This document shows, piece by piece, positions 1,885 to 57,771 of a DNA stretch of 64,000 bases. The notes below the pieces were generated by a model, which ran no database searches, was not told where the DNA came from, and was given only the letters and a program-made list of their open reading frames with translations. Made by a program: the position numbers and the translations under genes. The stretch covers positions 1-64,000 of IMG/VR virus record IMGVR_UViG_3300031951_021456; one strand, 5' to 3'. Each line of letters starts with the position of its first letter. Positions within the stretch are counted from its first letter, which is position 1.

Positions 1885-3348
1885 ATGACTTTTATTCAAG
1901 CTCTTAAAAGTGAATTGAATACCACTACAACTGAAAATGGCGCAAAGGCTTATAATTCTACTACAAATGAATGCCTGGATCTTTATGGCTCAATCGGTGC
2001 ATGTCGTACTAATTTGACTCATGCAGAACGTCTCTTCTTTAATGCATATGAGCAAGACCCGGAAACTGCTGTAAGAATTCTATTCTATTCAAGGGATATT
2101 CGGGGCGCAAGTCAAGGCGAACGTGCAGTGTTTAGGGCATTAATGCCGAAACTTGCACAAAAGAATCCTAAGGTAGCTTCCCGCCTAGTTTCACTGATTC
2201 CATACTACGGTCGCTGGGATGATCTCCTGTGCCTTGAAGGAACTTTGGTTTGGACTGAGGTACTTGAGACTATCAAAACTCAACTAAATGAAGATCTTAA
2301 TAGTGAGAAAGTATCGCTAGCTGCAAAATGGATGCCGAGTATCAATGCTTCTTCAAAAGAAAGCAAGCGTCTTGGTCGTCTAATTGCAGATCACATGGGC
2401 TGGTCAGAACGACAGTACCGGAAGAATCTTGCAACTCTACGAGCAAAGATTAACATCGTAGAAACTTCAATGTGCAAAAAGGATTGGAGTTCTATTGATT
2501 ATGAACGTCTTCCTTCCCGCGCTGCGATGATGTATCGCAATGCATTCAAAAAACATGATGAGGATCGCTATTCTGAATATCTCTCTCGTGTAGAGAACGG
2601 TGAAGCAAAGATCAATACGGGAACTCTTTTTCCTTATGATATTGTGAATAAGTATCTCTACAAAGGTTCTACCAACGATAAGACTCTTGAACAACAATGG
2701 GATGCTCTTCCTGATTATATGGAAGGTTTGGAATTCAACGGACTTGTTGTTGCTGATGTTTCATATTCAATGACATGGAATGGGGGAATGCCAATGGCTG
2801 TATGTCTCTCTCTTGCAGTTTATATTGCTGAGCGCAATCAATCAGAGATTTGGAAAAACAAATTTCTAACTTTCTCTCAATCTCCAACACTTGAAACTAT
2901 TCTAGGTAACACTATTGAAGAAAAAATCAGACATATTCTCAAATCAGATCCGGGAGGAAACACTGATCTGATGGCTACATTTAAAGTAATTCTTGATTCC
3001 GCAACTTCCAATAATGTCGCAGCAAATGATATGCCACAGAAACTGATCATTGTTTCTGATATGCAATTTGATCAGGCTTGCAGATCTAACAAGCGTACTA
3101 ATTTTGAACAGATTCAAAAGCTGTATCGTAAGGCTGGTTACGAAATGCCAGAGCTAGTATTCTGGAATGTAAATGCAAGTGCTAATGTGCCTATTCAAGC
3201 TGATGACACTGGAACAGCTCTTGTTTCTGGCTGTAGTCCTGCTATTCTGAAGAGTGTTTTGAGTGGTAAAATCATATCTCCAGTAGAAGTGATGATGAAT
3301 AGTCTTTATGTGGAACGCTATGATCCAATTGGACTAGCCTTTGCATAA
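1885..3348 (+). CDS. DUF2828 family protein with C-terminal vWA domain (Ro60/TROVE-like architecture)
   Basis: TTENG, RDIRG..GER, YGRWDDL, LAAKWMP, MIDAS-like DVSYSM, SDMQFD, VFWNV; GAGG RBS before ATG 1885. Confidence 0.85.
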   Translation: MTFIQALKSELNTTTTENGAKAYNSTTNECLDLYGSIGACRTNLTHAERLFFNAYEQDPETAVRILFYSRDIRGASQGERAVFRALMPKLAQKNPKVASRLVSLIPYYGRWDDLLCLEGTLVWTEVLETIKTQLNEDLNSEKVSLAAKWMPSINASSKESKRLGRLIADHMGWSERQYRKNLATLRAKINIVETSMCKKDWSSIDYERLPSRAAMMYRNAFKKHDEDRYSEYLSRVENGEAKINTGTLFPYDIVNKYLYKGSTNDKTLEQQWDALPDYMEGLEFNGLVVADVSYSMTWNGGMPMAVCLSLAVYIAERNQSEIWKNKFLTFSQSPTLETILGNTIEEKIRHILKSDPGGNTDLMATFKVILDSATSNNVAANDMPQKLIIVSDMQFDQACRSNKRTNFEQIQKLYRKAGYEMPELVFWNVNASANVPIQADDTGTALVSGCSPAILKSVLSGKIISPVEVMMNSLYVERYDPIGLAFA

Positions 3349-3644: not shown

Positions 3645-3716
3645 AGCGGAGGAGTGTCACGGTAGCACGAGGGTCTCATAAGCCCTAAGAGTAAGTTCAA
3701 TTCTTACCTCTCGCCA
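3645..3716 (+). tRNA. tRNA with CAT anticodon (Met-like), bulged acceptor stem
   Basis: AGGGT-CTCATAA-GCCCT; GTAAG-TTCAATT-CTTAC; acceptor GCGGAG/CTC(T)CGC. Confidence 0.7.
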
Positions 3717-6753: not shown

Positions 6754-6851
6754 AGAAAAAGAGAAACAAAAGGAAGATTCAAACCAAGAATCTAAAAGTA
6801 ATGAAGATCTTAGCTACCTCAATCAACATGATGATGGTTGTTGATTTTTAT

Positions 6852-6924
6852 GCTCCATTAGCTCTCTGATGAAAGCGTCGCCCTCATAAGGCGAGAAAGG
6901 TGGGTTTGATCCCCACATGGAGCA
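6852..6924 (+). tRNA. tRNA with CAT anticodon (Met or Ile2)
   Basis: GCTCCAT/ATGGAGC acceptor; TCGCC-CTCATAA-GGCGA; GTGGG-TTTGATC-CCCAC. Confidence 0.85.
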
Positions 6925-6981
6925 TTACAATGTCTCAACTGTCCATCATTGTTTGACAAACAGAGCATTGTGGGTTAAACT
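6924..6981 (+). promoter_or_regulatory. Sigma70 early promoter with palindrome half-site
   Basis: AACTGTCCA(6937), TTGACA(6953)-17 bp-TAAACT(6976). Confidence 0.75.
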
Positions 6982-10827: not shown

Positions 10828-11610
10828 ATGAATAATCTTTGGGATGTTAATCAATCAATGATTGACAATTACTTGCAAGCATGTAGAGAATTTACAAATA
10901 ATGATGAACTCTTTTGTAATTTTAAAAGAGATTCTAGATATACTCCTGTTCTTGAGCATTTAACTGAAGAAGATGCTCGGCTATATTTTTCAGAGATGAA
11001 ATCTAAAGAAGCTTTAACCAATATAGTTTTAGATTCTGTTAAAGAAAATGATCTTTATGGAACACCAGTAATAATCAATCATTCAGAATTAGGAGCAATA
11101 TCTCCAACAACAGTTAGGTATCTTAAAAACTCCTTGGATATTGTTGCTGGCTTTAAAGATAATCTTCCCTTTAAAAAGGTTCTAGAAATTGGTGGTGGAT
11201 ATGGAGGTCTGTGTAAAGTTTTTAGTTCCTTTAATAAATTTAATTCATATTATCTTGTAGATTTTCCTGAAGTTAATGGTCTTTCTAAGAAATATTTGAG
11301 TAATTTTAAAGATATCAGGAACAAAACCTATCAAATTTCAACTAATACTCTCAGAGAAATTAAAGACATTGATTTAGTCATTAGCAATTATGCTTTCTCA
11401 GAATGCTCAAGAGAAGTTCAAGAAACTTACTATAATCTGTATATTAAGAACGCAAAGAATTTTTATTTAGTGTATAACAACTTTACCGAAAATAATATGA
11501 ACTCTGAAGCATTTATTGAAAAAGCCTCTAAAGATTTTGAGATTTCATTTGAGACAGAGCTTCGCCCACCCCACACTGTTCACATCATCTACGGGAAAAA
11601 TGCTAATTGA
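10828..11610 (+). CDS. Putative sugar O-methyltransferase
   Basis: LEIGGGYGGL SAM motif, ISNYAFSE. Confidence 0.8.
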   Translation: MNNLWDVNQSMIDNYLQACREFTNNDELFCNFKRDSRYTPVLEHLTEEDARLYFSEMKSKEALTNIVLDSVKENDLYGTPVIINHSELGAISPTTVRYLKNSLDIVAGFKDNLPFKKVLEIGGGYGGLCKVFSSFNKFNSYYLVDFPEVNGLSKKYLSNFKDIRNKTYQISTNTLREIKDIDLVISNYAFSECSREVQETYYNLYIKNAKNFYLVYNNFTENNMNSEAFIEKASKDFEISFETELRPPHTVHIIYGKNAN

Positions 11611-12271
11611 TTTGAAAAAAATTCCAGCATATTATATTAATCTTTCTCATCATACCGAGAAAAGAGATAAAATGGAGACGTTATTAAGAAAACTCGGGTT
11701 TAATATGATTATTAGATTAGAAGGATATAACTATCCAGATAATCCCTCAGCAGGCTGTTCTAGAGCGCACTATGATGCTCTATTTAATTATCATAGCGAG
11801 AGGGGATGTCCTTTTATTCTTTTTGAAGATGATGTAATTTTGAATGAAGAACAATGGCTAGATGGAATCATTGATATTCCTAATGATGCAAGTGCATTAT
11901 ATTTGGGCACCTCAACTTGGGGTAGAATGAATGGCCATAATGGAGAATATATTCAATATGATGTGCTCCAAGATCATCCAGGAGTTTTAAAAATTTATAA
12001 TATGCTCGCAACTCATGCAATTTTATATTTAAATAAAGAGTATGTTAATATGATAAGACGAGCAGCATTTCACACTGGTTATGTAATTGAAGATTATAAT
12101 GACGTTGCATTTGCAGAATTGCAGAGATATTTCAAGGTTTATGCTCTTGATAATCCACTATTTTTCCAGACAAGTAATTTAAATGCTACAAATAAGAAAA
12201 TTACTTCAATAAATCATACAGAATGTATGGAAATCAACCCACTTCAATTTTATCCCTATTCTTTAAAGTAA
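11600..12271 (+). CDS. GT25-like glycosyltransferase
   Basis: YYINL, GCSRAH, FEDD. Confidence 0.75.
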   Translation: MLIDLKKIPAYYINLSHHTEKRDKMETLLRKLGFNMIIRLEGYNYPDNPSAGCSRAHYDALFNYHSERGCPFILFEDDVILNEEQWLDGIIDIPNDASALYLGTSTWGRMNGHNGEYIQYDVLQDHPGVLKIYNMLATHAILYLNKEYVNMIRRAAFHTGYVIEDYNDVAFAELQRYFKVYALDNPLFFQTSNLNATNKKITSINHTECMEINPLQFYPYSLK

Positions 12272-12936
12272 TGTATAATATTTCTGCAGATTGTCAAGTT
12301 AAAACTCTCAATGACATTTACACCAAATATTTTGGATATCCCTCAACAGGTTTCTTTGTTGAAGTTGGAGCGTATGATGGTGAATTTGTGTCTAATACCT
12401 CATTTCTTGCAGATATGGGTTGGAATGGTCTCTATATTGAACCAATCTATGATTACTATAAAAAATGCTTAAAACGTCACGAAAAAAATAATGTAACAGT
12501 TGCAAATGTTGCAATTGGCCTTGAAGAAGGCGAAGTTAAAATTTATCGCGGAGAAACACTTTCAACGCTTAATGCTGAGCAAGTAAATCGTTATAAAGAG
12601 ATTGATTGGTCTTCTCATATTAATTTTGAAGAAACTACCTGCGATCAGATGCGTTTGGATACATTGATGAAAAAACTAAATGTGCCAAAAAACTTTGATA
12701 TTCTTGTTGTTGATGTTGAGGGTAAAGAATCTGAAATATTCCAAACATTTGATTTGAATGAGTGGTGCCCTAAAATGTTGATTGTTGAGCTTGAAGATGA
12801 GCATCCCTCATTTCAAAATTATCCAGATTTGATTGAAGAGATTAAGTGTCTGAGGAAATTCATCAAATCAAAAGATTATACAGAAATCTATAGAGATTCA
12901 GTAAATACTGTATTTGTTTTAGGAGAATTATCATGA
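12271..12936 (+). CDS. FkbM family methyltransferase
   Basis: FVEVGAYDG..SNT, W.GLYIEP, VDVEG.E. Confidence 0.9.
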   Translation: MYNISADCQVKTLNDIYTKYFGYPSTGFFVEVGAYDGEFVSNTSFLADMGWNGLYIEPIYDYYKKCLKRHEKNNVTVANVAIGLEEGEVKIYRGETLSTLNAEQVNRYKEIDWSSHINFEETTCDQMRLDTLMKKLNVPKNFDILVVDVEGKESEIFQTFDLNEWCPKMLIVELEDEHPSFQNYPDLIEEIKCLRKFIKSKDYTEIYRDSVNTVFVLGELS

Positions 12937-37299: not shown

Positions 37300-37968
37300 A
37301 TGTCTTTACAAGCTAATATTAGCCCAAAACCTATATCAGCTTTAAAGAATACGATTCTTAGTCCTTCTTTAACGTCTCATTTTGCTGTAAAAATTGTACC
37401 ACCAGCTAATGATAGTTTCACTAAATTTATAACCGCTGAAGGTAGGTTTAAAAATTTTAATTTATCCAAACTAGATGAATTAACCCTACTTTGTAGCGAC
37501 GCCGCTCTCCCAGGGAGTAGTTTGTTTACACATGAAGTGACCAATGATTATCCTGGTGTTACAGAAAAAATGGTCTATCGTAGACAATATGATGACTATT
37601 CATCCTTCAATTTTTATGTTGATTTAAACTACGAAATAGTTGAATTTTTTGAAAGTTGGATAAATTATATTGTTAATGAAAATGATAGAACCAAATATGA
37701 GAATTACAGTGCATCATATAGAATGAAATTTAGGGAAGATTATGCAGGTTCAATGGCAATCACAAAATTTGAAAGAAGTATGGGAGCAGTAATTAATACT
37801 CAAAATACTACACCATCACTTTCTGGACCAAGAGTGAACTATCAATTTATTCAAGCATTTCCAATTTCAATAGATCCAATGCCAGTCTCATATGAAAACA
37901 CAACAGTTCTCAAATGCAATGTGAATTTTACTTACTTAAGATATATCCGAGAAAGACTCACTAAATAA
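37300..37968 (+). CDS. Tail tube / tail-tube initiator (gp19/gp54-like)
   Basis: LLCS.A.LPG, FYVD..Y....FFESW..YI, AFP.SI. Confidence 0.8.
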   Translation: MSLQANISPKPISALKNTILSPSLTSHFAVKIVPPANDSFTKFITAEGRFKNFNLSKLDELTLLCSDAALPGSSLFTHEVTNDYPGVTEKMVYRRQYDDYSSFNFYVDLNYEIVEFFESWINYIVNENDRTKYENYSASYRMKFREDYAGSMAITKFERSMGAVINTQNTTPSLSGPRVNYQFIQAFPISIDPMPVSYENTTVLKCNVNFTYLRYIRERLTK

Positions 37969-37990: not shown

Positions 37991-38713
37991 ATGCCATTAC
38001 CCACAATTGTAACTCCGATTTATGAACTCACTCTTCCTTCAACTGGGCAAGAAATTAAATATCGCCCATTTGTTGTAAAGGAAGAAAAAATTCTTCTGTT
38101 AGCATTGGAGTCTGAAGATCTTAAAGAGATCACAAATGCAATGAAAATTATTATTTCAAATTGCATTAAAACTAAGAATATTAAAGTAGAATCACTTCCT
38201 TCATTTGATATTGAATATATCTTCCTAAACATTCGCAAAAAGTCTGTTGGCGAAGAACTTGAATTGAATATTCTTTGTCCGGATGATGGAACCACTGAAA
38301 TTAAAGTAAAAATTGATATTGATGATATTGAAGTCAAAAAGAATCCGAATCATACCAATAAAATTGAAATTAGTAAAGATCTCATTCTAGAGTTAAAATA
38401 TCCGTCTTTGGATCAATTTATTCGCAATAATTTTAATCCAGAGAATATTACAGTTGATCAATCATTTGATCTTATCATTGATTCTATTGATAAGTTATAT
38501 GATAAAGAAAATGTGTATGCTCAAACTGATTATACAAAAGAAGAGTGGCTACAATTTTTAGATCAAGTTAATTCGGCACAGTTTATAAAAATTCAAGAAT
38601 TTTTTGAGACCATGCCAAAACTTTCACATACAATTGAAGTTGTAAATCCTAAGACTAAAGTAGAAAGTGAAGTTACTCTTGAAGGGTTAGGAGCTTTTTT
38701 TACGTCTCAATGA
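37991..38713 (+). CDS. gp26: Baseplate hub protein gp26
   Basis: MPLP....P.YEL.LPS....KYRPF.VKEEK.LL, FFETMPKL, LEGL..FF. Confidence 0.9.
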   Translation: MPLPTIVTPIYELTLPSTGQEIKYRPFVVKEEKILLLALESEDLKEITNAMKIIISNCIKTKNIKVESLPSFDIEYIFLNIRKKSVGEELELNILCPDDGTTEIKVKIDIDDIEVKKNPNHTNKIEISKDLILELKYPSLDQFIRNNFNPENITVDQSFDLIIDSIDKLYDKENVYAQTDYTKEEWLQFLDQVNSAQFIKIQEFFETMPKLSHTIEVVNPKTKVESEVTLEGLGAFFTSQ

Positions 38714-38880
38714 TGTATATGAGTCTTAAGACATATTATGAATTGAATTTTGCCATGTGTCAATTTCATAAATGGAGTCTTGAGTCTTTGGAAAATATGT
38801 TACCATATGAGAGGGAAGCATATACACTACTATTACAAAATCATCTTGAACAAGAAGAACAAGAAAAACAGAAGAAGTAA
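38710..38880 (+). CDS. gp51: Baseplate hub assembly protein gp51, not in ORF track
   Basis: YY..NFAMCQFHKWSL..LENMLPYERE.Y..LL..HLE. Confidence 0.8.
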   Translation: MMYMSLKTYYELNFAMCQFHKWSLESLENMLPYEREAYTLLLQNHLEQEEQEKQKK

Positions 38881-38883
38881 ATC

Positions 38884-40719
38884 ATGGCACGCTCCAATCC
38901 AAGAAAAAAGAATCTTCCTGATCTTGATACCGTCTTAAAAGAGTTGAGAGAGGAAAATAAACAAAAGCAACCTCAGGTAGAAAATACCCCCCAACAAACT
39001 CAACAAAAAAGTCCAGGAAAATATTCATCTCCTCTAGTAAGACCATCAAGCAGTAAAAATTGTTGCAATTGCTGCAAAGATATGCTAGCAGTATTGAGCA
39101 CTATCAATGACTCTGCAACAAAAATTTTATCTGCCCTTAAGGCCGAACATCTTCTAGATAAAAAGACTGCAGAAAAATTTAAAAAAGATCAGGAAGAGAA
39201 TGAGCGTAGAGAAAAAGAGAATCTCTTAGAATCTTCAGGAAGAAAATTATCAACTTCATTAAAAAGGGCTGTTGCACCTTTAACAAATGTATTAGACTCA
39301 ATTTTCAAATTTCTTTTATTTACATTAGCTGGACGAGTTGTAGGTAAAATTCTCAAGTGGTTTGCAGATCCTTCAAATGAAAGAAAAGTAAAGTCATTAA
39401 CTAGATTTCTTAGAGATTGGTGGCCAGCAATACTTGGCGCCTTTGTTTTATTTGGAACTAGATTTGGAGCTGCAATTAGATCAACAGTAAGAATGGCAAT
39501 TTCAACCATTCTTTATCTTAAGAAGATTGGTATTCCAGGTATCATTGCTGGTTTAAAGAAATTTGGTAAATTTGGTCTAATTGCTGGTGGAGTTACTGGA
39601 GCAGCTTTTATTGCTAATAAACTTTTAAATCCTGATAAAAAAGAAGATAAACAATCAGATAATCCAAATACAAATAAAGAACCAGAGAGATCTACAACAA
39701 CTCCACCATTAAAAATGGCTGGAGGAGGATTAGTTCCTAGATTGAGCATAATGTTCCCGGAGGAAAGACATGTAGATGAGATAAGTTATGCTGAGGGTGG
39801 TCCAATTGATAATGCAAGTGGCATTTCAATTACTGGAGCTGGCCCAGATACTCAGTTAATAGCAGCTCAACCTGGAGAAATAGTTATTTCAAAGGCTGCA
39901 GTAGATAAATTTGGGGCAGATACATTTTTAAGAATGAATCTCGCTGCCGGTGCAACAAATAAGCCAAAGTTTGCTGATAATATTCAATTGGCAAAGCAGG
40001 GTGGTATGGTTGGTAAAATGTCACCACCACCTTCTCCTAATAATCAAAATTTTAATATAGCTGCTCCAAATCTTACTTTTCCTGTTAATAATTCATTTTC
40101 TCAGCGCAGAGGAAATTCAAAAGTTTCCTTCAATATTCCACCACCAAATCAAAAGATTAAAAATTCTCAAATTAACTATAATTTAGCAAATTCATCATTT
40201 CCACGGATAAGTTTGGATAATCATAGTCAGAGTAATAAAAACTATGACTCAAGAACTTTGTCTAGTAAATATAATTTAATGTCTCCAAATTTATCACAAG
40301 ATAAATTTACAAATTATAATTCAAACCGATACAAACTTGTATCAAACAATTCAACAGAAGAGCCTAGACAAACTTCTAGAAATTCTCCCATGCAAATGGC
40401 TAAAATGGGTGGAAGAGTATTGGCTAGAAATAAACCTCAGCAATATTCAGCATCTTATGGACTAAAAACCGAAGAACCACCGATAACTTTCAATATAAAG
40501 ACTCATTTAGCATCAAAACCTGAAACAATAACTGCGCCTAGACCTAGAATTGCAAGAACTATAAACATTTCAGAACTTCCAGCTATTGATCTAAGAGCGA
40601 ATAAAATAGTTAATAATCCTCAGGCTCAGTCAGAAGTTCCAGATTTTTCTGCAATTCCAAGATTATCTGATCGTTATGGTGATAATGGAACTCTTGAAAT
40701 ATATGGAATTGAATTATAA
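38884..40719 (+). CDS. Baseplate hub / tape-measure-like virion protein
   Basis: Coiled coil, hydrophobic helices, GAGPDTQL...PGE.V motif; position after gp26/gp51. Confidence 0.6.
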   Translation: MARSNPRKKNLPDLDTVLKELREENKQKQPQVENTPQQTQQKSPGKYSSPLVRPSSSKNCCNCCKDMLAVLSTINDSATKILSALKAEHLLDKKTAEKFKKDQEENERREKENLLESSGRKLSTSLKRAVAPLTNVLDSIFKFLLFTLAGRVVGKILKWFADPSNERKVKSLTRFLRDWWPAILGAFVLFGTRFGAAIRSTVRMAISTILYLKKIGIPGIIAGLKKFGKFGLIAGGVTGAAFIANKLLNPDKKEDKQSDNPNTNKEPERSTTTPPLKMAGGGLVPRLSIMFPEERHVDEISYAEGGPIDNASGISITGAGPDTQLIAAQPGEIVISKAAVDKFGADTFLRMNLAAGATNKPKFADNIQLAKQGGMVGKMSPPPSPNNQNFNIAAPNLTFPVNNSFSQRRGNSKVSFNIPPPNQKIKNSQINYNLANSSFPRISLDNHSQSNKNYDSRTLSSKYNLMSPNLSQDKFTNYNSNRYKLVSNNSTEEPRQTSRNSPMQMAKMGGRVLARNKPQQYSASYGLKTEEPPITFNIKTHLASKPETITAPRPRIARTINISELPAIDLRANKIVNNPQAQSEVPDFSAIPRLSDRYGDNGTLEIYGIEL

Positions 40720-43451
40720 TGAATAGTTTTACTAGATCTTCTTTCATTCCAAAGAATAATGCCATTTATCCAAAATGTATAAAAGATCCTTTAGTTCTTG
40801 GGCTAAAATCTATTAACAATAATATGCGAAGAATGGACGCATATGTTGTATTAGGTTTAAAGGGAAAAAGAAAACTCAAAGAAGAGGAAGAGCGGCGAAA
40901 TAAACAATCAAATCGTCGCAAAAAGGAAAGTTCGTTAGAGAGGCAGAGAAAGGCAAATCCAATACTTTTTTTAAAAGATTCTCTCCCTAGAACAGGTTTT
41001 TTGGATGCAATAAGAAATTTTATTCTTTATACCGTAATGGGAAAAATGGTCCCATTCGTATTAAAAAATTTACCAGCCATTCTTAATGCATCTAAACTTC
41101 TCATACCAGTTTATAATTTTTTTGAAAACTTTTTGGGAAATGTTTTGAAGGGGGTCGTGAATGCTATAGATTTTGGCTATAGCATTCACGACAAAATGCG
41201 AAAACTTTTAAAGGATGTTACAGGAAGTAAATTTGAAAAAACATTTGACGATTTAGAAAAAAATCTCAATAATTTTTTAAATCTTGCTATCATTGCTGGA
41301 TTAGCGATTGGTGGAGCTGGAATTGGTAATATTGCTAAAGGGAGAAAAACTGGACTTAATTCTCTTACCGTACAACAACTTAAAAAATTAGCAAAAGAAA
41401 AGGGGCTAAAGGGTTATAGTAAATTCAGAAAAGCGGAACTCGTTGATTTATTAGAAAATAAACCGAAACCCGTAGCACCAGTAGCGAAACGAACTAAAGT
41501 TGGTGCTATTCCTGGTGCAAAATTTTTCGGTAAATTTGGCAGAGTATTTGGAAGAATTCCAATCATTGGTGGTCTTATAGATTTTGCTGTTTCACTTATG
41601 TTCGGTGAAAAAATTGGAAGAGCTGCAGCTAGAGCAGTTGGCTCAATGTTGGGTGCAGCTCTTGGGACATTTATTCCAGTTCCTGGTGTTGGAACCATTA
41701 TTGGTGGAATTTTGGGAGACATTGTTGGAGGAGCGCTCTATGACACACTTGAATCTTTCAATAAACCAAAAAGAATGGCTTCTGGTGGTCAAGTTGGAAG
41801 AAAAACTACTAATGTTTCAAGAAAAATAAGAGCAAAAAGAGTACAAAAACCCTCCAAACAAATTGCACAGAGAACCTCTCCAGGAAAACATGTTGGTGGT
41901 AAAGAAGAAATATCTAAACTTTTCCCAGATAGTGACGATTCAAATACGATGAGTTCTTTGAGAGTCTTATCTAAAAACTCATCAATTATGAAGAGCGGTG
42001 GAGTTTTAGGTAAGTTTCTTAGTTCTGGAGTTGAATTGATGGCTCTAGGTCAGAAAATAGAAAGACAAACTTTAATCGGCCTTGAAAAATATCTAGCCTA
42101 TGTGATTGACGCTTCCATTGCAGAAAAATCTAATGTAAATTCAAAAGCTCTTGCTGGAACAATGCTCGCAATGGCTGAAGGTGGAATTGTTCCAGAAAAT
42201 AGAACTCTTATTAGTTCTAGAGACACAACTGGAACTGTAGTTGCTAAAGATATTGTAAAATCATTTAATTCTATGATGAGTAATAAAAGTGCGGCGATTT
42301 TACAAAATATTAAAAGTGAAATTTCCTTATTTAAGCCTGGTGTAACTCCTGGGGCAATTGAGCCCACTTTTAGTGGAGAAATCGGTGGGTATGGATCATC
42401 TGAAGAACAGGCTCTTTTAAAGGCCATACGTTTTGCAGAGGGAACAACCTCAAGTTACGGTGTCATATTTGGTGGAGCTATTATCCCAGAATTAGCAGAG
42501 GGTAAAATGACAGTGAAAGATGTCATTGATATGGGAAATAGCGGAAAACTTCCATCTAAATTTGGTGGAAGAAATGCCGGTTATGGTTCGGGTTCTGCCG
42601 CAACTGGCGCATATCAGTTTATGCCTTATACTCTGGAAAGTCTTATTAAAGATGGAACATTAAATCTTGGTGATCTTTTTACACCAGAACTGCAAGATAA
42701 AGCTGCATTAGCATTGGCAAAACGAAGAGGAGTTACCTCAGAAATGTTAAGAAAAGAAGGCCTTAGTGCAAATATTTCAGCAAAACTTGCACCAGAATGG
42801 GCATCTTTTCCTACTTTATCTGGTGGTAGTTATTATGGTCAACCATTTAAAGAATTAAGTTCTTTACAGAAAATATATAAAGACACTTTATCTAAATCGT
42901 CAATTTCTACTTCTGGTTCAAACCCAATTTCGGTTGGATTAGATTTACTCAAACAGGGTTTTACAGTTGCTGAAAATAGATTTTTCACAAAATTTCAGGG
43001 TTTTAATCCTGCTGGAACGTCAATTGTAGGTAGACATTCAAATAGTGCAGATCATGCCGAACATTCCCTAGATGTAACTGATTGGCGTGGATCTGAAAGT
43101 GAAGGTATTGAAAGACTTAAAAAATTATTTAAAAAGTTATACCATAATAAAGAAAAAATGGGAATAGTAGAATTAATTTTTGATCCAATTGGCCATTGGT
43201 TTGATGGTATGCGTTCGTATTCTGCAGATCCTATAGGGGGTCATCATAATCATTTGCATATTAGATTTAAAACTCCAGCGAGCAAATCAATTTTCTCCCA
43301 GCAATTAAAATCATCAGTATCATATAATAAGAACATTAATTTAGCTTCAAATCAACCCACATCATTGGTTACAAATTATATAAGTAATAAGAATACATAT
43401 ACTGATAACTCACAACAAACACAAATTTTAATTCAACCTATTCTTACATAA
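40719..43451 (+). CDS. Tape-measure-like virion protein with Rho-N-like, lysozyme-like and Zn-peptidase-like domains
   Basis: Gly-rich hydrophobic helices; ALLKAIRFAEGT...ATGAYQF...EWASFP; H...LDV...HHNHLHI. Confidence 0.65.
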   Translation: MNSFTRSSFIPKNNAIYPKCIKDPLVLGLKSINNNMRRMDAYVVLGLKGKRKLKEEEERRNKQSNRRKKESSLERQRKANPILFLKDSLPRTGFLDAIRNFILYTVMGKMVPFVLKNLPAILNASKLLIPVYNFFENFLGNVLKGVVNAIDFGYSIHDKMRKLLKDVTGSKFEKTFDDLEKNLNNFLNLAIIAGLAIGGAGIGNIAKGRKTGLNSLTVQQLKKLAKEKGLKGYSKFRKAELVDLLENKPKPVAPVAKRTKVGAIPGAKFFGKFGRVFGRIPIIGGLIDFAVSLMFGEKIGRAAARAVGSMLGAALGTFIPVPGVGTIIGGILGDIVGGALYDTLESFNKPKRMASGGQVGRKTTNVSRKIRAKRVQKPSKQIAQRTSPGKHVGGKEEISKLFPDSDDSNTMSSLRVLSKNSSIMKSGGVLGKFLSSGVELMALGQKIERQTLIGLEKYLAYVIDASIAEKSNVNSKALAGTMLAMAEGGIVPENRTLISSRDTTGTVVAKDIVKSFNSMMSNKSAAILQNIKSEISLFKPGVTPGAIEPTFSGEIGGYGSSEEQALLKAIRFAEGTTSSYGVIFGGAIIPELAEGKMTVKDVIDMGNSGKLPSKFGGRNAGYGSGSAATGAYQFMPYTLESLIKDGTLNLGDLFTPELQDKAALALAKRRGVTSEMLRKEGLSANISAKLAPEWASFPTLSGGSYYGQPFKELSSLQKIYKDTLSKSSISTSGSNPISVGLDLLKQGFTVAENRFFTKFQGFNPAGTSIVGRHSNSADHAEHSLDVTDWRGSESEGIERLKKLFKKLYHNKEKMGIVELIFDPIGHWFDGMRSYSADPIGGHHNHLHIRFKTPASKSIFSQQLKSSVSYNKNINLASNQPTSLVTNYISNKNTYTDNSQQTQILIQPILT

Positions 43452-57687: not shown

Positions 57688-57771
57688 CGGCCTCTGATGG
57701 AATAGGTAGACATAGTGGACTTAAAATCCCCTGTCCGTAAGGGCGTAAGAGTTCGAGTCTCTTGGGGCCGA
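57688..57771 (+). tRNA. tRNA-Leu(TAA)
   Basis: CGGCCTC/GGGGCCG acceptor, CTTAAAA anticodon loop, long variable arm, AAGAG-TTCGAGT-CTCTT T arm. Confidence 0.9.

What the first reader, a model, noticed from the sequence alone, without database searches (positions are those of the whole stretch)
38693..38880. Candidate programmed -1 frameshift fusing gp26 to gp51, analogous to tail-chaperone G/GT
Seen: gp26 ends GCT TTT TTT ACG TCT CAA TGA. The heptamer T-TTT-TTT (38695-38701) is in the X-XXY-YYZ register, and the -1 frame continues without a stop (TAC GTC TCA ATG ATG TAT) into gp51. The pair lies immediately before the tape-measure-like genes. Established: long-tailed phages use a -1 frameshift between two chaperone ORFs preceding the tape measure gene. 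Inference: gp26/gp51 here may be the T4-like equivalent. An ATGA overlap also allows ordinary translational coupling.
Basis: partly seen in the sequence, partly recalled or inferred. Interest (0 to 1): 0.6.

Follow-up and report, generated by a model that had tools for sequence, protein, structure and literature searches.

The report
Tail-chaperone frameshift site, T4-like phage
The run of T's at the end of this phage's gp26 gene is a conserved slip site that most likely lets ribosomes read on into the small "gp51" frame, giving a short and a long tail-assembly chaperone from one gene; this was described for T4-like phages in 2022, but genome records still do not annotate it.

Summary
gp26 (37991-38713) ends GCT TTT TTT ACG TCT CAA TGA, T_TTT_TTT (38695-38701) is in X_XXY_YYZ register, and the -1 frame is open from 38683 to 38880.

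In this one AT-rich sequence the heptamer is no more than chance. The comparative evidence is strong:
- All 81 distinct related junctions carry T_TTT_TTY in the same register.
- The codon before it varies (AGT, AAT, TCT, GAT, GCT) but always ends in T.
- The gp51-like part is always in the -1 frame, and 46 of 81 have no start codon for it.
- In 15 of 81 a -1-frame stop abuts the heptamer.

T4 gp51 aligns end to end with the predicted fusion, and T4 gp26 ends at the shift point. Phages with both genes have no T-run. The gp26 N-domain model matches solved tail assembly chaperones (HK97 2ob9 and three others).

So gp26 is the short chaperone and gp26-"gp51" (296 aa) the long one, as in lambda G/GT.

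It is not new. Vladimirov, Gautam and Davidson (Virology 2022) identified these genes; I could not read that paper. Ribosomal versus transcriptional slippage is not settled here. Interest is modest.

The parts
37300..37968 (+). Tail-tube-like protein (222 aa), at the position of the gp54-type tube initiator and corresponding to lambda V in gene order
   Evidence: Pfam PF23849 Phage_TTP_2 E 3.7e-14 and phrog_45 'tail tube' E 1.2e-27. The same position is annotated as baseplate tail tube initiator in phi-Grn1 and S13. The major tube gene lies elsewhere, at G000:C1 161769-162392 beside sheath and portal genes.
37991..38713 (+). gp26 homologue, the short tail assembly chaperone (TAC-N), 240 aa, the 0-frame product
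   Evidence: Pfam T4_baseplate E 1.8e-68 and phrog_150 E 2.5e-73. It is the only copy in the 248-kb genome. AF2 model pLDDT 85.3; residues 1-~90 match solved TACs 3fgx Z 8.2, 2ob9 Z 7.4, 3klu Z 7.2, 5ir0 Z 4.8.
38695..38701 (+). Slippery heptamer T_TTT_TTT, the shift site
   Evidence: Read directly. T_TTT_TTC (75) or T_TTT_TTT (6) sits at the same place in 81 of 81 distinct junctions. The preceding codon always ends in T although its amino acid varies. In 15 of 81 a -1-frame stop abuts the heptamer.
38701..38880 (+). The -1-frame extension (59 codons plus stop). Joined to 37991-38701 it gives the predicted long chaperone TAC-NC of 296 aa
   Evidence: The frame is open. It aligns end to end with the C-terminus of T4 gp51. 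Residues directly after the shift are conserved (R, I/V/L, A/S, L, x, H ... L-E-N-Y-Y). AF2 gives a small three-helix domain, pLDDT 80.
38710..38880 (+). The 56-aa ORF as a gene caller sees it ('gp51'), with its ATG overlapping the gp26 stop as ATGA
   Evidence: phrog_634 E 3e-20, matching only profile positions 60-114 of 121. The nearest SD-like AGGAG (38689-38693) lies 16 nt upstream of the ATG.
38884..40719 (+). 611-aa protein at the tape-measure position (identity not shown)
   Evidence: Only PHROGs of unknown function (phrog_35029 E 1.8e-47) and no similarity to T4 gp29. Assigned by position only.
40719..43451 (+). 910-aa protein. Its N-terminus is related to that of the 611-aa protein, and it carries a lysin-like region; possibly a tape measure with a lytic domain
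   Evidence: phrog_35997 is shared with the 611-aa protein; phrog_90 and phrog_12490 (lysis), weak phrog_23574 'tape measure' E 0.002; Rho_N/SAP-like motif at residues 213-242.

Best explanation
gp26 is the tail assembly chaperone of this T4-like phage. Most ribosomes translate it to the TGA at 38711 and release the 240-aa short form (TAC-N). A minority slip back one base on U_UUU_UUU (38695-38701). Both tRNA-Phe re-pair perfectly, and translation continues in the -1 frame for 59 more codons. This gives a 296-aa long form (TAC-NC) whose C-terminal three-helix domain is what annotators call 'gp51'.

By analogy with lambda G/GT, the shared N-terminal chaperone domain would coat the tape-measure protein, and the rarer extension would bring in tube or hub proteins. 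Neither form would stay in the virion.

Shown here: the site, its conservation, the fold, and the end-to-end alignment of the fusion with T4 gp51. Inferred: that the slip is ribosomal, that it is a minority event, and what the extension binds.
For: 1. Nucleotide-level conservation. 81 of 81 distinct junctions have T_TTT_TTY in register. The preceding codon is AGT 27, AAT 19, TCT 17, GAT 9 or GCT 9, so it always ends in T. Elsewhere in gp26 these amino acids use a T-ending codon 30-78% of the time, and Phe is TTT 68% of the time.

2. The extension depends on the shift. It is always in the -1 frame and always open. 46 of 81 have no ATG, GTG or TTG before or near its start. In 38 of 62 distinct peptides the first Met lies at position 19 or later, beyond conserved residues. 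In 15 of 81 a -1-frame stop abuts the heptamer, which pins the shift to it.

3. Breadth. The same site occurs in Kyanoviridae, Aeromonas phages 65 and Aeh1, a KVP40-like phage, Cronobacter S13, Stenotrophomonas Yut2, Xanthomonas X1 and Ralstonia RSP15.

4. Natural control. Phages with two family members (T4, RB69, Bp7, avDM1, Berthold, GAP161) encode the long form as a separate 247-251-aa gp51, and their gp26 has no T-run (GAG TTC TTT, TTT GTT, TTT CTA). The ten single-gene genomes checked, this one included, have one copy, against two in T4, the only two-gene genome counted this way.

5. Fold. The top four of 48,161 chains are all tail assembly chaperones.

6. The T-run is only six T's in 75 of 81 junctions. 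From memory, that is short for polymerase slippage, whereas U_UUU_UUC is a classical tandem-slip heptamer.

7. Literature. gp26 and gp51 are hub assembly chaperones, and gp51 is absent from the T4 particle (PMC3004832). Poly-T -1 signals in TAC-N genes of T4-like phages are cited as known (PMC12846349).
Against: No protein, ribosome-profiling or reporter data exist for this phage or, as far as I could find, for its relatives.

No conserved downstream RNA structure was found. Alifold on the gapless alignment gives none, and the window's best hairpin is only -4.4 kcal/mol. Lambda G/GT also works without one (from memory).

This phage, unlike most relatives, has ATG codons at 38710, 38713 and 38719, so the extension could also be made on its own.

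The title of Vladimirov et al. [quoted passage not shown] I could not read the paper, so I do not know whether that refers only to T4's two genes (as PRFect summarises) or also to the poly-T sites.

The conserved Phe-Phe motif fixes part of the T-run for protein reasons.
Confidence: 0.72

Rival explanations
1. Transcriptional slippage. RNA polymerase stutters on the T-run and adds one U to a fraction of transcripts, and normal translation of these gives the same 296-aa fusion.
For: The signal is a homopolymer run. Extending it by the third-position T of the preceding codon would help polymerase slippage as well as tRNA re-pairing. The title of Vladimirov et al. [quoted passage not shown] No stimulatory RNA structure is conserved.
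Against: The run is exactly six T's in 75 of 81 junctions, seven in this window, and is never longer than eight in the junctions read. From memory, known bacterial slippage sites need about eight or nine. Selection has not lengthened the run. Contigs from four runs show no length variant at the run, but contigs hide rare variants and none of the RNA contigs crosses the site.
Confidence: 0.12
2. No recoding in this phage. The 56-aa ORF is translated on its own from ATG 38710 by termination-reinitiation at the ATGA overlap, and the heptamer is an inherited relic.
For: An ATGA overlap and two more in-frame ATGs at 38713 and 38719. The closest relatives (L003-L005, Bellamy) also have an ATG near the start of the extension. 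Vibrio phages K413 and YC show that a free-standing extension with its own ATG exists in nature.
Against: The heptamer is intact, in fact a T7 run, with the preceding GCT ending in T, and the -1 frame is open across the junction. The residues before the ATG (Y-V-S) fit the conserved pattern I/V/L then A/S. No SD lies at a usual distance from the ATG: AGGAG is 16 nt upstream. K413 and YC, which do rely on an ATG, have lost the T-run, whereas this phage has not. The genome has no second gp26-family gene that could supply a long form.
Confidence: 0.1
3. Chance. A T-run in an AT-rich gene end beside an overlapping small ORF, with no function.
For: 133 in-register slippery heptamers in 71 ORFs of this window, six of them near stops. 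One is T_TTA_AAG at 12262, beside an ordinary TAATG overlap.
Against: Conservation in 81 of 81 relatives at a third codon position where the amino acid varies, and loss of the run exactly where a separate long gene or an ATG exists.
Confidence: 0.02

Closest known systems
T4-like tail assembly chaperones TAC-N / TAC-NC (T4 gp26 / gp51), Vladimirov, Gautam and Davidson, Virology 2022;566:9-15
   Same: Same protein family (PF12322), same two products, and same poly-T signal as cited from that paper. T4 gp51 aligns end to end with the fusion predicted here, and T4 gp26 ends at the shift point.
   Different: T4 and its close kin encode the two forms as two genes, divergent in T4 and tandem in GAP161, with no T-run. 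This phage has one gene plus the slip site. I could not read the paper, so I cannot say how much of the comparative detail given here is already in it.
Lambda gpG / gpGT and the conserved -1 frameshift of long-tailed phages (Xu, Hendrix and Duda 2004; Levin et al. 1993)
   Same: A short and a long chaperone share an N-terminus. [quoted passage not shown] The gene order is tube-like gene, chaperone, then large proteins. The long form is expected to be rare: 3-4% in lambda (PMC9603447). The N-domain has the chaperone fold.
   Different: No detectable sequence similarity. gp26 is larger (240 aa) and has a second domain (residues ~90-240) absent from HK97-type chaperones. The extension is only about 60 aa. 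The heptamer is U_UUU_UUY, not G_GGA_AAG (lambda's heptamer from memory).
Phage P2 gpE / gpE+E' (Christie et al. 2002)
   Same: A contractile-tailed phage with a -1 frameshift on a T-run (T_TTT_TTG, from memory) between two chaperone frames ahead of the tape measure.
   Different: An unrelated sequence family and a simple baseplate. It was not examined here.
Vandenendeviridae / Andersonviridae chaperone locus with invariant GTTTTT motif (PMC12846349)
   Same: A start-less -1 extension annotated as intergenic or as a hypothetical protein, with a conserved poly-T motif at the 3' end of TAC-N.
   Different: Different phage families. Their motif is GTTTTT rather than a full T_TTT_TTY heptamer.

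Membership tests
T4 gp26/gp51 family (Pfam PF12322 T4_baseplate; PHROG 150) | Full-length match to the family profile above the curated cut-off | tested here: met
   231 bits against a cut-off of 24.5, profile positions 2-218 of 219; phrog_150 E 2.5e-73.
T4 gp26/gp51 family | The C-terminal extension of the long form (PHROG 634) is present and aligns in order with T4 gp51 | tested here: met
   phrog_634 E 3e-20 for 38710-38877. T4 gp51 residues 147-246 hit the same PHROG. The alignment is colinear across the junction.
Frameshifted tail assembly chaperone pair (G/GT type) | [quoted passage not shown] | tested here: met
   T_TTT_TTT at 38695-38701, with the -1 frame open from 38683 to 38880. Conserved in 81 of 81 relatives.
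Frameshifted tail assembly chaperone pair (G/GT type) | The second frame has no independent start, so it is expressed only as a fusion | tested here: inconclusive
   True for 46 of 81 relatives. This window has ATGs at 38710, 38713 and 38719.
Frameshifted tail assembly chaperone pair (G/GT type) | Tail-assembly-chaperone fold | tested here: met
   Predicted model only. Residues 1-~90 against 3fgx Z 8.2, 2ob9 Z 7.4, 3klu Z 7.2 and 5ir0 Z 4.8, which are the top four of 48,161 chains and all chaperones. Foldseek probability for 2ob9 is 0.80.
Frameshifted tail assembly chaperone pair (G/GT type) | Location between the tube gene and the tape-measure gene | tested here: inconclusive
   The upstream tube-like gene is present. 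The downstream 611-aa and 910-aa proteins are not identifiable as tape measures by sequence. The protein at that position in a KVP40-like relative hits tape-measure phrog_58 at E 7e-10.
Frameshifted tail assembly chaperone pair (G/GT type) | Two products are made in a fixed ratio, both are needed for tail assembly, and neither is in the virion | not testable with these tools
   Only literature on T4: gp51 is required but absent from the particle, and gp26 and gp51 are listed as hub assembly chaperones (PMC3004832).

The most novel reading that the evidence does not exclude
The U_UUU_UUY slip site is the ancestral way of making the long chaperone across the whole T4 superfamily (Kyanoviridae, the deep Straboviridae lines, Menderavirus, RSP15-like phages). 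It works as a true, unstimulated ribosomal -1 frameshift. On this reading the T-even two-gene arrangement arose once by duplication and fusion, and the Ackermannviridae-like branch later lost the heptamer. Within that branch, Kuttervirus phages such as bering keep a start-less -1 extension behind only a T_TTC, which would need a non-canonical recoding signal that has not been described. Parts of this may already be in Vladimirov et al. 2022, which I could not read.
Probability: 0.3. Interest if true: 0.5.

Novelty: already known. Interest (0 to 1): 0.3.

Why it matters
The result settles an old annotation puzzle. Cyanophage 'gp51' is only about 20% of the length of T4 gp51, and gp51 was reported 'missing' in Aeh1 (Sullivan 2010). 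The rest of the protein is gp26, joined by a frameshift.

None of the 15 single-gene GenBank records that I opened annotates the join. Callers either truncate the extension at the first ATG (34-57 aa) or leave a gap. Several hundred phage records carry a close gp26 homologue, so the same omission is likely common.

For biology, it puts T4-like phages under the same rule as other long-tailed phages. It also gives a natural pair of solutions to the same need, one gene with a slip site or two genes, for studying why the ratio of the two chaperone forms matters.

As a discovery it is not new, so its value lies mainly in confirmation and annotation.

Tried and rejected
- **Complex prediction.** There is therefore no test of what the extension binds.
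- **Locus searches.** An alignment-based search of IMG/VR failed because no conserved stretch was found. Single distant queries (RSP15, phage 65) gave only 1 and 5 loci.
- **RNA structure.** RNAalifold on a gapless alignment of 77 junctions gave no consensus. Per-sequence folds of the 60 nt downstream give a mean z of -1.3, with 27% below -2. Hairpins are lineage-specific: a 14-bp stem in S-PM2, nothing of note in the window. I did not pursue covariation. An upstream GAGGG about 9-10 nt before the heptamer is at a dnaX-like distance, but it encodes the conserved Glu-Gly, so it is not separable from protein constraint.
- **Tape measure.** BLASTP of the 611-aa and 910-aa proteins against T4 gp29 and the KVP40-like protein at the tape-measure position found nothing.
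- **Sequencing runs.** Only assembled contigs were available. There is no length variant at the T-run, and the one RNA run does not cross the site, so the runs say nothing about polymerase slippage.
- **Extension fold.** Foldseek with the 59-aa extension model found nothing, and Pfam has no family for it.
- **L008.** It first looked like an exception, but that was my script overrunning a stop. It has AAT TTT TTC GCA TAG like the rest.
- **Prior paper.** Vladimirov et al. 2022 is not held in the library. Its content is known to me only through two citing papers.

Full report
**1. What is in the sequence**

The ORF 37991-38713 ends GCT TTT TTT ACG TCT CAA TGA. T_TTT_TTT occupies 38695-38701, with its first T at a third codon position. 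The -1 frame reads TAC GTC TCA ATG ATG TAT and runs on to a stop at 38878-38880. That frame is closed upstream by a TGA at 38680-38682, so only about 30 nt are available for a shift.

The first ORF is a full-length member of Pfam T4_baseplate (E 1.8e-68). The 56-aa ORF matches phrog_634, 'baseplate hub assembly catalyst', but only profile positions 60-114 of 121.

Upstream lies a tail-tube-like gene (37300-37968). Downstream lie a 611-aa and a 910-aa protein that I could not identify as tape measures by sequence. The window is the first 64 kb of a 248-kb virus record that occurs in freshwater metagenomes.

**2. Chance**

At 33% G+C the window has 133 in-register slippery heptamers in 71 ORFs. 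Six lie within 30 nt of a stop, including T_TTA_AAG at 12262 beside a plain TAATG gene overlap. The case rests on comparison with relatives.

**3. Comparison with relatives**

A search of IMG/VR with gp26 returned 80 loci at 44-100% identity. I added GenBank phages through tblastn. In every single-gene locus that reaches the junction, except the three described below, gp26 ends NNT TTT TTY.

Over 81 distinct junctions:
- The heptamer is TTTTTTC in 75 and TTTTTTT in 6.
- In 78 of them one codon separates the heptamer from the stop.
- The preceding codon is AGT (27), AAT (19), TCT (17), GAT (9) or GCT (9).

So the amino acid before Phe-Phe changes freely while its third base stays T. This is the reverse of the usual pattern, and neighbouring third positions are only 30-50% conserved. 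Elsewhere in the same genes, T-ending codons make up 75% (Asn), 62% (Ser), 30% (Ala) and 78% (Asp), and Phe is TTT 68% of the time.

The gp51-like part is always in the -1 frame and always open, for 56-67 codons.
- 46 of 81 junctions have no ATG, GTG or TTG from the upstream -1 stop to 12 codons past the heptamer.
- In 15 of 81 a TAA in the -1 frame (from ...C TAA TTT TTT) abuts the heptamer, so the shift can occur nowhere else.
- The residues read right after the shift are conserved: R in 54 of 62, then I/V/L, A/S, L in 50 of 62, x, H in 48 of 62, then L-E-N-Y-Y.
- In 38 of 62 distinct peptides the first Met comes only at position 19 or later.

The window's Y-V-S-M-M-Y fits this pattern without an indel.

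The same site occurs far outside the cyanophages: Aeromonas phages 65 and Aeh1, KVP40-like phi-Grn1, Cronobacter S13, Stenotrophomonas Yut2, Xanthomonas X1, Ralstonia RSP15, Methylophilales phage Melnitz and phage C48C1.

None of the 15 single-gene records I opened annotates a join. The small ORF is cut at the first ATG (34-57 aa) or left unannotated.

**4. The natural control: T4**

In T4, genes 26 and 51 are divergent neighbours. T4 gp51 (249 aa) matches the gp26 family profile over its full length in residues 1-201 (E 3.9e-52), and phrog_634 in residues 147-246.

When aligned, T4 gp51 is colinear with the predicted fusions...DVF|KLLVNPDEIF... against ...AFF|YVSMMYMSLK... T4 gp26 ends ...EFF|ELL*, exactly at the shift point.

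The six two-gene phages examined have a long gp51 of 247-251 aa and no T-run in gp26. The codons there are GAG TTC TTT, GAA TTT GTT or GCG TTT CTA, or the motif is absent.

A profile search counts two family members in T4, the only two-gene genome counted this way. It counts one in this genome, S-PM2, S13, Aeh1, phage 65, phi-Grn1, RSP15, K413, bering and X1.

On a maximum-likelihood tree the gp26 and gp51 of the two-gene phages together form one side of a branch with 98/96 support. The single-gene forms lie on the other side. This fits one duplication, but the root is not determined.

**5. Exceptions**

Vibrio phages K413 and YC have no heptamer (TCA CTT TTC AAG TAA; GAG GCT TTC ATG TAA), but they have a proper ATG for the -1 ORF.

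Salmonella phage bering (Ackermannviridae) has GAG ATT TTC ATT TAA. Its unannotated -1 extension has its first GTG/ATG 12-13 codons in. I cannot explain how that extension is expressed. The three group together next to RSP15 on the tree.

**6. Fold**

An AF2 model of the window's gp26, built from 39 sequences, has pLDDT 85.3. An exhaustive structural scan of 48,161 chains put four chains on top, all aligned to residues 1 to about 90:
- 3fgx, Z 8.2
- 2ob9, the HK97 tail assembly chaperone, Z 7.4
- 3klu, YqbN, Z 7.2
- 5ir0, Z 4.8

The first three are described as phage tail assembly chaperones in PMC9603447, and 5ir0 as the chaperone of the satellite PLE1 in PMC12987554. Foldseek gives 2ob9 its highest probability, 0.80, although at a poor E-value.

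Z values of 7-8 are not decisive on their own. Four chaperones out of four top hits is what carries weight here.

The rest of gp26 (residues ~90-240) has no clear match. The extension models as three helices at pLDDT 80, with no match in the PDB.

**7. Mechanism**

The best reading is a -1 ribosomal slip of two tRNA-Phe on U_UUU_UUY, giving a 240-aa short form and a 296-aa long form.

I found no conserved stimulatory RNA structure. Some lineages have a hairpin a few bases downstream, such as the 14-bp stem in S-PM2, but the window's best is -4.4 kcal/mol. I therefore expect low efficiency, as for lambda G/GT (3-4%, as cited in PMC9603447). That expectation is inference.

Polymerase slippage would give the same protein. 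Against it, the run is only six T's in 75 of 81 junctions, and from memory known bacterial sites need more. The contig data could not test this.

In this phage a free 56-aa peptide started at the ATGA overlap remains possible as an additional product. As the only route it is unlikely: the heptamer is intact, no second family gene exists, and the lineages that do rely on an ATG have lost the T-run.

**8. What is known**

- Leiman et al. 2010 list gp26 and gp51 as hub assembly chaperones, and say gp51 is absent from the particle.
- Sullivan et al. 2010 noted that cyanophage gp51 is about 20% of normal length and that gp51 is 'missing only in Aeh1'. They offered no explanation. Both points follow from the frameshift, and the Aeh1 extension is there, start-less and unannotated.
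- One GenBank record, Acinetobacter phage Berthold, already calls gp26, gp51 and gp28 'tape measure protein assembly chaperone'.
[quoted passage not shown] The paper is not held in the library.
- PRFect summarises that paper as showing that some T4-like phages carry a short gene and a long fused gene instead of frameshifting.
- PMC12846349 cites it for poly-T -1 signals in TAC-N genes of T4-like phages.

So the kind is known. This genome is one more instance.

**9. Verdict**

The finding is already in the literature at family level. What remains open is the mechanism (ribosome or polymerase), the efficiency, the partner of the extension, and the Kuttervirus exception.

I left out no step for safety reasons.

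Noticed in passing
L102 (Aeromonas phage Aeh1, NC_005260) 2205-2384: gp51 was reported 'missing only in Aeh1' (Sullivan 2010). An unannotated, start-less 60-codon -1 extension follows GAT TTT TTC GAC TGA at the end of gp26, so the long form is encoded after all.
   Followed up: yes
L099 (Salmonella phage bering, Kuttervirus) 2290-2490: gp26 ends GAG ATT TTC ATT TAA with no slippery heptamer. A homologous extension still lies in the -1 frame, unannotated, with its first GTG/ATG only 12-13 codons in, and a terminator-like hairpin follows it. How it is expressed is unexplained.
   Followed up: partly
L089 (Vibrio phage K413) 3040-3310; L090 (Vibrio phage YC) 3170-3420: In these relatives the T-run is lost and the extension has its own ATG. 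This is a third way, besides the slip site and the second gene, of encoding the extension.
   Followed up: partly
L106 (Cronobacter phage GAP161) 1501-2794: In Pseudotevenvirus the long gene (gp51, 247 aa) and the short gene (gp26, 185 aa) are tandem on one strand between gp54 and gp25, unlike T4's divergent pair.
   Followed up: no
window 38884-43451: The 611-aa and 910-aa proteins after the chaperone share an N-terminal region (both hit phrog_35997). The 910-aa one also has a Rho_N/SAP-like motif (residues 213-242) and lysin-like regions. Neither is recognisably a tape measure by sequence.
   Followed up: partly
window 12262-12273: T_TTA_AAG lies in register 9 nt before the stop of ORF 11516-12271, and the next gene overlaps as TAATG. 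It looks like a frameshift site but is most simply a chance heptamer at an ordinary gene overlap. It shows how common such sites are at 33% G+C.
   Followed up: partly
window 3646-3715, 6851-6925, 57688-57771: Three tRNA genes: two tRNA-Met (CAT) and one tRNA-Leu (TAA).
   Followed up: no
L082 (S-PM2) about 3225-3265: A 14-bp hairpin (TGTTCTATAATAAT ... ATTATTATAGAACA, about -13.5 kcal/mol) starts 9 nt after the heptamer. Similar but non-homologous hairpins occur in some other cyanophage lineages and not in the window.
   Followed up: partly
whole record G000 (window = C1:1-64000): IMG/VR classes this 248-kb record as a provirus, yet its gene content is that of a T4-like lytic phage: sheath, tube and portal at about 160-164 kb, and hub and chaperone genes in the window. 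The runs that hold it are freshwater and 'fungus metagenome' samples.
   Followed up: no
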